A stretch of DNA of 64,000 nucleotides, taken from Aplysia californica. Lineage: Eukaryota. Position 1 is the first letter of the stretch. Each line of letters begins with the position of its first letter. Positions 12,801 to 15,800 of this stretch are shown here, in pieces. The stretch spans positions 1,573,421 to 1,637,420 of the forward strand of contig NW_004797275.1 in assembly GCF_000002075.1 (NCBI RefSeq), read 5' to 3'. The position numbers were made by a program, and so were the translations under genes. Below the pieces are notes generated by a model. The model was not told where the DNA came from. It saw only the letters and a list, made by a program, of their open reading frames with translations, and did no database searches.

Positions 12801-15800
12801 CTCTGTGGAGCACAGTGTAATGGGCTGTTGTTCATTCATTAATACCTCAAGGACCATTTAATTATTAAAGATCATGTGATGGAGGGATATTTAGCTTTCA
12901 TACTTTAAAATAATGAAGTGCTTTACCATGTGTGTGCTTTATTGGCACTCTGGTGTGGTACGTTCCTTCCACTTCTTTTGTGGTGTTACTATAGTCCTAT
13001 TCTGTCTCTGTAAAAAATGTGGCCATGCTGAATCATTATTAATGAGTACTCCATCCTTGTTTACCTAGGCTCTTAGTTGAACAGATACTACTGCCAAGTT
13101 GCCTGGAATGAACAATACGACTTTCCAGCACCCTGTTGTCTTTTATTGTTATAAAAAAAACTCCTTCCGTGTTTGGTGTTTGCATATGTCCCTGTGTTGA
13201 TATTTGAATCTGAATACAATGACACTTTGCCCATTGCTGCTCATTTCTCCTACCTCCAAATCATCGTACTTCCCTCATTTTTCTTTTCTTTCTGTATTCA
13301 ACCACACCTGAGTTGTCTTGCAGCTTGTCCAGGAGACATTGAGGTTTTTACTGGGGATGGTCCCCTGCCTATGGCCATATTTGAACTGCTTGAATATATA
13401 GTCAACGAGGTAACCGATCAGAAGTCCGCTGCATGATTACTCTTTGTACATGTGTTTATATTTGTATGTATGTATGTATGTATGTGTTTTGTAAATATAC
13501 ATCTTTTAGTTAATTTGTTTGGTTGTTTGTTTGGGTTTGTTTTTGTTTTTTTAAACTTTTATGTGGTCATGAAAATTCTTATCATTATATTTTGTGTTCC
13601 GTCATCTTTGTGCATTTTTGTTGGAGCGCATGCAACCTCCTGGGCTGTGTATTATATCGACAGAGCTTCCCAACGCCTCTCCTATTTGCCGAGTTCCTGT
13701 CAGTTTTTAGTTCTAGTGTAGGGACTGATTTAAGCTCCATAAGCTCAGCAGTGCTTTCTTCAAGCTTTCTTAGTTTTTGGGTGCATTTGCATAAATGTTT
13801 TTGCAGTATATCTTGTCATAAGAATGCCTTTTTGTTTTGCGAACTGGCTGTTAATGAATGGCAATGGTTCCGATACTTGAGTTATCTTGAGACTTTTCAA
13901 CTGAGTGAAAGGGAAATAGATAAAGTATGTTAGGTTACAGCAGTCATATACATACATCATTTGTACAATGTGTATATTTCATAAAGTTGTTAAAAATTTT
14001 CTAAAATGAAATGTGCTGTTAACACATCAGTGCATGGCTACAATGGGATGCATACCTGAAAAAAAAGCGTCGCCATGCTAAGGCTAATTTGCATAAATTA
14101 TGCATGTGTGCCTCATATGATTCAAGGTCAAAGTGCCTAGGATGTAAACTCGTGTCATTTTAGAATGTGTGCCATTTTGTTATTTAATATTATTAAAAGA
14201 CAATTTGTCGAGCGATACATCGAAGACAGGTGCATACACTTTCAATGCTTTTCGAAGTTCGAAGTTGTCACTAAATTCTAGTACAGGGGTTTTTTTTTTA
14301 CAATTTAGGTCAGCTGACACTTTGTCTTTTGTTCTATTTTTCTATTGTGATACTTTTTCTTTCTTTATTTCAATTTGATTGTAGTGATATGTTACATGAA
14401 GTTTGTGTGTCCTCACAATTGGACTGCAGGGTTGGGGGGGGGGGGGATTTTCTTGGGTATGGGGGGGGGGGGAAGTAAAGCAACTCTTCACTGATTGTTA
14501 GCATCAACTTTTCTGTATCTGATGCTTAGTCTGTTCTCAAAGGCATGGGAGCGGAGATCTGCTCTAAAACAGGAGGTTGTATTGTGTACCAATCAAGTCA
14601 TAAAGTGTTTCAACATACATCGTAATTCACACATGTACTCTGACTGGATAGTCTTGACTTCCACCTGTTTTTTTGGGGGGGGTTTTGTATTCTTCTTCTT
14701 TACTATTTTACGGTCTTTGGCAGACCTTGATGAATGTTAGCCTTGAAGGAAAATGAAAAAAAAAAGACAAGCTTTCCTATTCAAACAACTTTTTATTCCC
14801 GTTTTAATTCTTTTATGAGGTGATGTTATCTTGCATGTTTATATTACTTTGTAAGTAGTTGAAAGTGATCATTCAAAGACAGTGGCGTGAGATATTTTTC
14901 CGTGCATGTTGTTGCATATCTTCCTCATACCAGTGTGTGAATTACTTTGTTCCTGAAAGACTTTACCACATCTGCCTGTCAGTTCCTTGATTCACGACGA
15001 CTGCAGATGGTTTAGCAAAGCCTTTGTTCTTTGTTCCGAGTCTTCACTTTTATTTTCCCAGCAGCCTTGTTCCGACCTACAAACTGCTTTGTGTTTCCAT
15101 CCAGGTGTAGATGTTACAGCACCACCCACACCTTTGTGGACTGCTGTTCTTCCTTTTTATTGAATTTGTTGTTGTGTTGTACTTGTTTTCATCTTTGTTG
15201 TTTTGGGTTGTTTATTTTTTAATGTTCACGTTTGGGGATTGTGATTTTTTATTTTTTTTTCCATATGTTTATTTTACTATGACATTTTGTTTCACTTGAT
15301 GTGGACAGTACAATTCCTGTGGCTGCCTCCCCTTATGGTTGGAGACTTCCAGCTTTCAGTGTGCGTGCGTCTGTAACAGCTGGGTTGTCTTCTCTTGCTT
15401 TCTAGGCACCCGCAATAACTATATGGTACCAACGCAGGGGGGCGCTGCTGAGGCACCGCGATCTATGGCCATATTTGAGCTTTTAGATTACATTGTGAAT
15501 GAGGTATGTGATCCCTGCTTCTTACTACTAAAAGACTTACAAAGCCCAAAGCAACTAAGGGCTGCTTTGGTCTTTAAAGAATGATACAATGTTTTATATT
15601 GCAACTTGACATGCTTGTTTTGTGGGTTGTTCTTTTTACCTCCATCTCCCTGCAGAAATGGAGTTGAAGTATTGTGAACAAGACATAAGACAAGTGCTAA
15701 TGAAAAAGTTGGAAAAACTGATATTGTTTAGTTTCTTTCTTACAATTAGATTTCTTCAACAGTTGTTTTTTTCTATTTAAAAATCATACTTGTAGCTTCT

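What the first reader, a model, noticed from the sequence alone, without database searches (positions are those of the whole stretch)
13324..15503. MEK gene has a duplicated, mutually exclusive exon 8 that swaps the proline-rich regulatory insert
Seen: two paralogous exons 2 kb apart both end in MAIFELL[E/D]YIVNE with the same phases (1 in, 0 out). Their N-terminal halves are unrelated: 8a [16 protein letters not shown], 8b [20 protein letters not shown]. The shared part differs mostly at synonymous positions, as expected if both copies are under selection. Including both gives a frameshift and TAG at 15484-15486, and skipping both also frameshifts, so exactly one must be used. Known: this segment is the end of the proline-rich insert, where vertebrate MEK1 and MEK2 differ most (scaffold binding, PAK/ERK phosphorylation), plus helix alphaG, the RAF/KSR interface. 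Human MAP2K1 has a single exon 8. Inference: one invertebrate MEK gene makes two MEK1/MEK2-like regulatory isoforms by splicing. I know of no description of this switch.
Basis: partly seen in the sequence, partly recalled or inferred. Interest (0 to 1): 0.82.

Follow-up and report, generated by a model that had tools for sequence, protein, structure and literature searches.

The report
Ancient mutually exclusive exon in MEK
The single MEK (MAP2K1/2) gene of the sea hare Aplysia carries two alternative copies of exon 8, only one of which can be used per mRNA; the pair is conserved in molluscs, annelids, brachiopods and nemerteans, and databases list the isoforms but I found no paper describing them.

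Summary
Exons 8a (13324-13409) and 8b (15406-15503) are homologous. Both have AG/GT splice sites, enter in phase 1 and have lengths of 2 mod 3. Using both gives TAG at 15484-15486; skipping both also frameshifts.

The window is Aplysia californica. RefSeq isoform X2 (XP_005089386.1) matches the window exons and carries 8a. A 3.6-kb transcript contig joins exon 7 to 8a and has no piece on 8b. Use of 8b in Aplysia is not shown here.

Ten other lophotrochozoan genomes hold 8a then 8b in the same order. Each type is annotated or assembled as an alternative isoform in gastropods, bivalves, Octopus, a chiton and Lingula. Amphioxus has one exon. The 8a peptide was found only in Lophotrochozoa.

Regulatory marks:
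- 8a has a GTAA donor and an invariant TGCATG about 20 nt downstream in four heterobranchs.
- 8b has a GTATGT donor, and its nucleotides and upstream intron are unusually conserved.

The switch replaces the loop before helix alphaG, equivalent to human MEK1 residues ~291-307. The MEK1/MEK2 analogy is untested. The isoforms are in RefSeq; six literature searches found no description.

The parts
773..23221 (+). Coding span of the MEK (MAP2K1/2 orthologue) gene: 11 exon positions, with exon 8 in two versions
   Evidence: tblastn of P0200 (XP_005089386.1, Aplysia californica isoform X2) on the window gives 96-100% identity in most exon pieces; lower values come from HSPs that run past an exon edge. 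The first 12 residues ([12 protein letters not shown]) are an exact in-frame match at 773 and the last 20 residues at 23159-23218. Inner exon edges other than those listed below are approximate.
10293..10418 (+). Exon 6 (activation segment, ...[13 protein letters not shown])
   Evidence: Open frame. Transcript contig joint 10417>11602, GT..AG with cut +1.
11603..11792 (+). Exon 7, constitutive, ends in phase 1 (...TGRPLK + g)
   Evidence: It is single-copy in the 927-Mb genome.
13324..13409 (+). Exon 8a (86 nt): [29 protein letters not shown], the derived, lophotrochozoan-specific copy, with a weak GTAACC donor
   Evidence: Sequence. Joint 11790>13322 (cut +2) in a 3609-nt contig of run X21 at depth 22. 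Present in RefSeq isoform X2, P0200. Orthologous exon in ten other genomes.
13430..13435 (+). TGCATG (Rbfox-type motif) 21-26 nt downstream of the 8a donor
   Evidence: Invariant in aligned position in Aplysia, Biomphalaria, Elysia and Bradybaena, while the surrounding intron diverges. GCATG is enriched within 300 nt downstream of 8a across nine species.
13608..13647 (+). Conserved intronic block about 200 nt downstream of 8a that contains a second GCATG
   Evidence: 88% identity over 42 nt with Biomphalaria. Not recovered in Elysia or Bradybaena.
15312..15405 (+). Highly conserved intron segment upstream of 8b (GU-rich stretch, CTGTAAC branch-like site, polypyrimidine tract)
   Evidence: Together with exon 8b it is 95.6% identical to Biomphalaria, 90% to Elysia and 87% to Bradybaena, against 73-76% for constitutive exon 7.
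15406..15503 (+). Exon 8b (98 nt): [33 protein letters not shown], the ancestral-type copy, with a GTATGT donor
   Evidence: Sequence. Orthologous exon in ten other genomes. Used in isoforms of Biomphalaria, Physella, Arion, Bradybaena and others. Its use in Aplysia itself is not shown.
15484..15486 (+). TAG reached if 8a and 8b are both included
   Evidence: Frame bookkeeping.
20765..20826 (+). Exon 9 ([20 protein letters not shown]...), constitutive acceptor for either exon 8

Best explanation
This is the single MEK1/2 orthologue of Aplysia californica. Its exon 8 exists as two tandem paralogous copies that are spliced in a mutually exclusive way.

Shown:
- Both copies have intact splice sites and the same phase.
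- Both lengths are 2 mod 3, so only mRNAs with exactly one copy keep the frame. Both copies give TAG inside 8b, and no copy gives an early TGA. Nonsense-mediated decay of those mRNAs is inferred.
- 8a is spliced between exon 7 and downstream exons in an Aplysia transcript contig and in RefSeq isoform X2.
- The 8a-then-8b arrangement is present in all ten other lophotrochozoan genomes examined (molluscs, annelids, a brachiopod, a nemertean). Each type is annotated or assembled alone in isoforms of one gene in many of them.

Inferred:
- The duplication arose in the lophotrochozoan stem. 8b keeps the ancestral form, because it resembles the single exon of amphioxus and Priapulus. 8a is the derived copy.
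- 8b is probably the default exon. It has a strong GTATGT donor and is the isoform assembled in about 200 oyster contigs.
- 8a is probably a regulated exon. It has a weak GTAA donor and a conserved TGCATG just downstream, as expected for Rbfox-type activation in neurons or muscle.

At the protein level the switch replaces the 15-19 residues that end the proline-rich insert. These are equivalent to human MEK1 ~291-307, the stretch that I recall holds T292 and S298. Helix alphaG stays almost unchanged. This most likely alters regulation or partner binding, not catalysis.
For: - Sequence, phases and splice sites.
- Selection: pS 0.95 against pN 0.06 between the copies; P about 2e-5 for one or fewer amino-acid changes under random substitution.
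- Transcript: the X21 contig (3609 nt, depth 22) joins exon 6>7>8a, and X21 has zero depth on 8b.
- Identity: genome size and contig count; P0200 = XP_005089386.1, isoform X2 of Aplysia californica, with 8a.
- Isoform pairs differing only in exon 8: Arion, Bradybaena, Haliotis, Gigantopelta, Pomacea, Babylonia, Crassostrea, Mya, Octopus and Lingula. In Saccostrea, and in the chiton Liolophura (where the 8a isoform X3 is a read-through model), both types occur but the paired isoforms also differ elsewhere.
- Tandem order and 2-mod-3 lengths in ten other genomes. One exon in Branchiostoma.
- The 8a-type peptide occurs only in Mollusca, Annelida, Brachiopoda and Nemertea.
- Type-specific donors are conserved across phyla.
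- Nucleotide-level constraint on 8b: 76% against 49% identical synonymous codons. Exon 8b plus its upstream intron is 87-96% identical among heterobranchs, against 73-76% for exon 7.
- TGCATG downstream of 8a.
- Protein mapping: phmmer to human MEK1 structures at E = 4e-170, with the aligned segment visible. AF2 models give a low-confidence loop followed by a helix.
- Frame-shift/NMD is a recognised way of enforcing exclusivity, and 'one ubiquitous exon plus regulated exons' is the usual pattern (PMC5740500).
Against: - No read or protein shows 8b in an Aplysia mRNA. X21 has zero depth there, and no Aplysia 8b isoform turned up in the protein collection.
- The three poly(A) RNA runs had zero depth on every MEK exon. 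They say nothing about either exon or about double inclusion.
- Many of the isoforms in relatives are automatic gene models. Only some are transcript-derived: the Logan contigs by their source label, and the Arion entries by my recollection that they come from a transcriptome assembly.
- The Rbfox link rests on a motif alone. GCATG is absent within 300 nt downstream of 8a in Octopus and Owenia.
- The Fox-1_C family scan of the genome found nothing, but its controls did not ring either, so it is uninformative.
- No functional difference between the isoforms was tested. The AF2 models are of low confidence in the variable segment.
Confidence: 0.88

Rival explanations
1. One copy is a dead or dying duplicate in Aplysia. 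On the present evidence that would be 8b, since only 8a is seen in mRNA. The gene would then make a single protein.
For: Only 8a is seen in the Aplysia transcript contig and in the Aplysia protein found.
Against: - 8b has an open frame, a strong acceptor tract and a GTATGT donor.
- With 65-94 nt of upstream intron it is 87-96% identical to three other heterobranchs, far above constitutive exon 7.
- Sister species express 8b isoforms.
- The protein is named 'isoform X2', which implies that RefSeq holds another isoform.
Confidence: 0.04
2. The pair works mainly as an unproductive-splicing switch. Inclusion of both exons, or of neither, would be used to send MEK mRNA to nonsense-mediated decay and set MEK dosage, and the point would not be to make two proteins.
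For: Both double inclusion and double skipping give early stops in every species examined. Many validated exon pairs of this kind show some joining reads (PMC5740500).
Against: - The 8a-specific peptide is conserved at the amino-acid level across four phyla (66% mean identity in the variable part) while its synonymous sites vary freely. That points to selection on the protein.
- Full-length 8a and 8b isoforms are annotated or assembled in many species.
Confidence: 0.05
3. Exon choice is set by competing long-range RNA pairing (a docking site with selector sequences), as in Dscam or 14-3-3. On this view the extreme nucleotide conservation of 8b reflects base pairing and not protein-binding sites.
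For: 8b keeps invariant synonymous positions across phyla, including two six-fold-degenerate Leu codons, and outgroups do not share them.
Against: A duplex scan of the conserved 30 nt of 8b against the flanking introns in nine species gave energies no better than shuffled probes. The best partners lay at inconsistent places. The scan was simple and could miss imperfect or multi-part helices.
Confidence: 0.1

Closest known systems
Mutually exclusive, tandem-duplicated exon substitutions in kinases: FYN exon 7A/7B (PMC9741552), and JNK MAPK8-10 exon 6a/6b and p38alpha MAPK14 (from my own knowledge)
   Same: Two homologous neighbouring exons encode the same structural segment of a kinase, and exactly one is used. 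The events are ancient and both copies are under purifying selection. One copy is usually the default and the other regulated (PMC5740500, PMC9741552).
   Different: The gene is MEK, for which I found no such event described. The event is restricted to Lophotrochozoa and absent from the human, fly-type and amphioxus sequences seen here. The swapped part is a disordered regulatory loop plus helix alphaG, not part of the catalytic core.
Vertebrate MEK1 and MEK2 paralogues
   Same: The region that differs between 8a and 8b aligns to the end of the proline-rich insert (human MEK1 ~291-307). From my own knowledge this is where MEK1 and MEK2 differ most and where MEK1 carries the T292 and S298 regulatory sites. 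After gene duplication, paralogues of genes with such exon pairs often keep one exon each (the FYN family, PMC9741552).
   Different: Vertebrate MEK1 and MEK2 both carry the 8b-like (ancestral) type, and none carries the CPGxFxV..GDGPLP motif. The vertebrate split is therefore not the same event, and functional equivalence is untested. The RNS motif of most 8b exons, which resembles a basophilic kinase site, is itself lost in Aplysia (TRNNY).
Rbfox-activated alternative exons
   Same: A (U)GCAUG lies closely downstream of a weak-donor alternative exon. It is positionally conserved in four heterobranchs and enriched across phyla.
   Different: Only the motif is shown. No binding, dependence or tissue pattern was tested, and two of nine species lack the motif within 300 nt.

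Membership tests
Mutually exclusive tandem-duplicated exon pair | Neighbouring exons within one intron interval that are homologous in sequence | tested here: met
   The last 13 codons differ by one amino acid. Both exons lie between exon 7 and exon 9.
Mutually exclusive tandem-duplicated exon pair | Same phase, compatible lengths, canonical splice sites on both | tested here: met
   Phase 1 in and phase 0 out. Lengths are 86 and 98 nt, both 2 mod 3, with AG/GT on both. The same holds in the eight other species checked.
Mutually exclusive tandem-duplicated exon pair | Each exon is found alone in mature transcripts | tested here: inconclusive
   In Aplysia, 8a alone is shown (contig; P0200) and 8b is not seen. 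In relatives, both single-exon isoforms are annotated or assembled in at least ten species.
Mutually exclusive tandem-duplicated exon pair | A mechanism that prevents productive joint inclusion or joint skipping | tested here: met
   Both exons give a frameshift and TAG at 15484-15486. Neither exon gives an early TGA. Actual decay by NMD was not tested.
Mutually exclusive tandem-duplicated exon pair | Both copies are maintained by selection in related species | tested here: met
   Both are intact and in the same order in ten other genomes from four phyla. pN is far below pS.
MEK1/2 (MAP2K1/2) orthologue | Full-length similarity to MEK1/2, including the activation-segment SMANS motif and the proline-rich insert; single-copy in the genome | tested here: met
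   phmmer of P0200 against PDB MEK1 chains gives E = 4e-170 over residues 17-388. Exon 7 has one locus in the genome. Pfam Pkinase is on record for P0200.
Rbfox-regulated exon | A conserved (U)GCAUG within about 300 nt downstream of the activated exon | tested here: met
   TGCATG at 13430-13435 is invariant in four heterobranchs. Ten GCATG were found against about 2.7 expected in nine species, P about 5e-4, or 4e-3 if heterobranchs are counted once.
Rbfox-regulated exon | Inclusion depends on Rbfox and is biased to neurons or muscle | not testable with these tools
The Fox-1_C scan of the genome was uninformative because its controls were silent.
Docking-site/selector (competing RNA structure) exon cluster | Conserved complementary intronic and exonic sequences that pair | tested here: not met
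   The duplex scan was no better than shuffled probes in nine species. This was a simple test only.
Steric (branch-point proximity) exclusive exons | The intron between the two exons is too short to be spliced | tested here: not met
   The intron is 1996 nt in Aplysia and 666-2418 nt in most species. Only Lineus has a short one, at 71 nt.

The most novel reading that the evidence does not exclude
Exon 8a defines a second MEK protein that has been kept for more than 500 million years across Lophotrochozoa. It would be switched on by Rbfox-type factors in neurons or muscle. Its conserved CPGxFxV-TGDGPLP loop replaces the phosphorylatable, scaffold-binding end of the proline-rich insert. One gene would then supply two differently wired entries into the ERK cascade, a splicing counterpart of the vertebrate MEK1/MEK2 division. 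In Aplysia this could bear on ERK-dependent long-term facilitation.
Probability: 0.3. Interest if true: 0.75.

Novelty: new member of a known kind. Interest (0 to 1): 0.56.

Why it matters
MEK is the single gateway to ERK, and Aplysia is a classic system for ERK-dependent synaptic plasticity. From my own knowledge, work in molluscs treats MEK as one protein. Here the gene encodes two forms that differ in the loop which, in mammals, carries feedback and PAK phosphorylation sites and binds RAF and scaffolds. The form assembled in the one Aplysia transcript run examined (X21) is the lineage-specific one.

The pair is conserved in four phyla, so it is under long-term selection and is easy to test. 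One RT-PCR across exons 7-9 separates the isoforms. It is also a clean case for studying how a two-exon exclusive choice is regulated, because it offers type-specific donor sites, a conserved UGCAUG and frozen synonymous sites in 8b.

Tried and rejected
- Poly(A) RNA runs X22-X24 were laid on 10250-16249. Depth was zero on all MEK exons, and reads piled only on intronic repeats. The runs are uninformative, either as 3'-end libraries or because conserved reads were filtered.
- An alignment of a full-length relative with the separate window exons, meant as a profile query, was scrambled by MAFFT and abandoned.
- The 8a and 8b intron flanks within Aplysia show no similarity beyond the exons. The duplication is therefore old.
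- Docking/selector RNA pairing for the conserved part of 8b was no better than shuffles.
- AF2 models of an 8a isoform (mean pLDDT 59.6) and an 8b isoform (71.7) both give the variable half as a low-confidence coil. No structural difference can be read from them, and no fold search was run.
- The Fox-1_C (PF12414) scan of the genome found no match, but the controls were also silent, so it says nothing.
- A search for an Aplysia 8b-isoform protein found none among the cluster representatives or the members listed.
- Six literature searches found no description of this exon pair.
Exons were searched by reference one at a time, and the database protein P0200 stood in for the spliced product. Exon pieces were concatenated only inside a local script, to count reading frames.
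Full report
THE OBSERVATION. Exon 8a (13324-13409, 86 nt) follows a pyrimidine tract and cag, and ends before gtaacc. Exon 8b (15406-15503, 98 nt) follows ...ctttctag and ends before gtatgt. Exon 7 ends at 11792, leaving one base of a codon, and exon 9 begins at 20765. With that base, 8a reads [29 protein letters not shown] and 8b reads [33 protein letters not shown].

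The last 13 codons differ at 9 of 39 nucleotides but at only one amino acid. By Nei-Gojobori counting, pS is 0.95 and pN is 0.06. Nine random substitutions leave one or fewer amino-acid changes in 2 of 100,000 trials. Including both exons gives TAG at 15484-15486, and skipping both gives an early TGA. The flanking introns of the two copies are not alignable, so the duplication is old.

THE GENE AND THE ORGANISM. Open frames on the + strand hold the whole MEK kinase in 11 exon positions, from the ATG at 773 to the last coding codon at 23216-23218. The genome has 927,310,431 bases in 4332 contigs and holds exon 7 once. An exon-7 query against the representative library returned a full-length chiton MEK. 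Using that protein as a word-search query returned XP_005089386.1, 'dual specificity mitogen-activated protein kinase kinase 1 isoform X2 [Aplysia californica]' (P0200, 390 aa). P0200 matches the window exon by exon and contains 8a. Against solved structures, P0200 matches human MEK1 at E = 4e-170. Exon 8 aligns to roughly MEK1 residues 291-320: the end of the proline-rich insert, followed by [13 protein letters not shown]. From my own knowledge, that insert segment carries T292 and S298. AF2 models of an 8a isoform and an 8b isoform both give a low-confidence coil for the variable half and a helix for the shared half. By my own knowledge of MEK1 structures, that helix is alphaG.

IS 8a USED? 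Yes. Run X21 (organism A, 2009) holds about 4% of the words of the 10-kb stretch, which is roughly its exon share. It contains a 3609-nt contig at depth 22 that joins 10417>11602 and 11790>13322 with GT..AG ends. After 13409 the contig leaves the laid stretch, and X21 has zero depth over 8b.

The three poly(A) raw-read runs had zero depth on every MEK exon and so say nothing. I found no Aplysia protein with 8b. Use of 8b in this species is therefore inferred, not shown. The name 'isoform X2' implies that RefSeq holds another form.

RELATIVES. In the protein hits, one gene yields two isoforms that differ only in this segment in these taxa:
- Arion vulgaris. From memory, these two UniProt entries come from a transcriptome assembly.
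- Bradybaena, Haliotis, Gigantopelta, Pomacea and Babylonia.
- Crassostrea gigas and C. virginica, and Mya.
- Octopus and the brachiopod Lingula.
In Saccostrea both types also occur, but the paired isoforms differ as well at the N-terminus or by an optional 6-residue insert. In the chiton Liolophura both types occur too, but the only 8a isoform (X3) is a model that reads through the 8a donor.

I then fetched the genomic loci of ten species: Biomphalaria, Elysia, Bradybaena, Haliotis, Crassostrea, Octopus, Lingula, the nemertean Lineus, and the annelids Lamellibrachia and Owenia. Every one has an intact 8a-type exon upstream of an intact 8b-type exon, after exon 7 (not located in Lineus) and, in the eight loci where exon 9 was placed, before it. 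In the eight loci whose boundaries I worked out, all exon lengths are 2 mod 3, so the frame rule holds there as well.

Amphioxus has a single exon of the 8b kind, and the Priapulus gene found is intronless. A search scored on the 8a segment alone found the CPGxFxV..G[DE]GPLP type only in molluscs, annelids (also Capitella and Ridgeia), Lingula and Lineus. Arthropod and hemichordate hits covered only the shared half. The simplest reading is one duplication in the lophotrochozoan stem, with 8b ancestral and 8a derived. No flatworm, rotifer, bryozoan or phoronid was identified among the named hits.

HOW THE CHOICE MAY BE MADE. Exclusivity itself is explained by the frame. This is a recognised mechanism for such exon pairs (PMC5740500). 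Steric hindrance does not apply, because the inter-exon intron is 1996 nt here. Only Lineus has a short one, at 71 nt.

The two copies carry different, conserved signals:
- All 8a donors are GTAA followed by a non-consensus base. All 8b donors are GTATGT or GTACGT, across four phyla.
- A TGCATG sits 21-26 nt downstream of the 8a donor in Aplysia. It is invariant in aligned position in four heterobranchs while the neighbouring intron diverges.
- Within 300 nt downstream of 8a, nine species hold ten GCATG against about 2.7 expected. The Poisson tail is 5e-4, or 4e-3 if the two heterobranchs are counted once.
- Exon 8b with 65-94 nt of upstream intron is 87-96% identical among heterobranchs, whereas constitutive exon 7 is 73-76% identical.
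- Across all nine species, the last 39 nt of 8b keep the identical codon in 76% of synonymous comparisons, against 49% for 8a. Two six-fold-degenerate Leu codons are fixed in eight of the nine. Amphioxus and Priapulus use other codons there.

I read this as follows. 8b is the default exon and carries dense regulatory information. 8a is a weak exon that needs an activator, plausibly an Rbfox protein. This is inference from motifs only. A simple search for a base-pairing partner of the frozen 8b segment found nothing better than shuffled controls. What constrains those nucleotides is unexplained.

WHAT THE SWITCH DOES TO THE PROTEIN. The shared helix is essentially identical in both forms. The E/D difference is not type-specific, since the 8b exon of Mytilus and Elysia has E. 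The real difference is the preceding 15-19 residues. The 8a version is the better conserved one, with 66% mean pairwise identity against 48% and an almost fixed length. That points to a specific contact, not a mere spacer. Most 8b versions contain [ST]RNS[FY], which resembles a basophilic kinase site at about the position of human S298, but Aplysia's TRNNY lacks the serine. Whether the forms differ in RAF/KSR binding, scaffold binding or feedback phosphorylation is untested. The MEK1/MEK2 comparison is an analogy, because both vertebrate paralogues carry the 8b-like type.

NOVELTY. The isoforms are already in RefSeq as automatic models, including the Aplysia one. Six full-text searches found no paper that describes an alternative exon 8 in MEK, its conservation or its regulation. 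That library lacks most subscription journals, so this is absence in the searched set only. I class the finding as a new member of a known kind, namely ancient tandem-duplicated exclusive exons as reviewed in PMC9741552.

LIMITS. Exons went by reference one at a time, and P0200 stood in for the product. Many relatives' isoforms are gene predictions. The species in the motif and codon counts are related, so the statistics are indicative only.

Noticed in passing
window:10450-10650: A short stretch of intron 6 collects about 2000 partly matching RNA reads per run on both strands. Many reads run on into poly(A) after 10637/10638, and many variant letters are seen. It looks like the tail of a highly expressed dispersed repeat (SINE-like), not MEK expression.
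   Followed up: no
window:11184-11450: A second pile of RNA reads in intron 6, at depth 20-30. Between 38 and 56 molecules per run begin at exactly 11309 on the + strand. It is either a repeat or an unannotated transcript start.
   Followed up: no
L005:1-823, L006:1-277, L008:1-301: In Octopus, Lineus and Owenia a gene with a Ribosomal_L22 domain lies head-to-head just upstream of MEK. This looks like microsynteny conserved across three phyla. I did not check it at the Aplysia locus, where the window starts only about 770 nt before the ATG.
   Followed up: no
L009:1001-2188: The Priapulus caudatus MEK gene found is a single uninterrupted 395-codon frame with no introns. It may be a retrogene, or the sign of massive intron loss.
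   Followed up: no
P0175, P0306, P0312 (Babylonia, Pomacea, an unnamed ENA contig): The caenogastropod 8a region carries an extra 16-residue repeat of its own first half (ACPGG..TSYFP followed by ACPGD...GDGPLP). On one contig it is contiguous in a single frame, so it is a lineage-specific internal duplication that keeps the length at 2 mod 3.
   Followed up: partly
P0169, P0295 (Saccostrea, Crassostrea virginica): Oysters have an optional 6-residue insert (VRAKDG or IKTVDG) between exon 7 and exon 8. It combines with either 8a or 8b and is probably an 18-nt micro-exon.
   Followed up: no
P0198 (Lamellibrachia), P0283 (Liolophura X3), P0313 (Mactra), P0303 (oyster Logan contig): Several database proteins read through the 8a donor into the intron, or through both exons. 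The weak 8a donor seems to mislead gene predictors, or to allow intron retention.
   Followed up: partly
window:2145-2244 and 8863-9012: Two runs of N (100 and 150 bases) lie in introns 1 and 4 of the MEK gene. They were left untouched.
   Followed up: no
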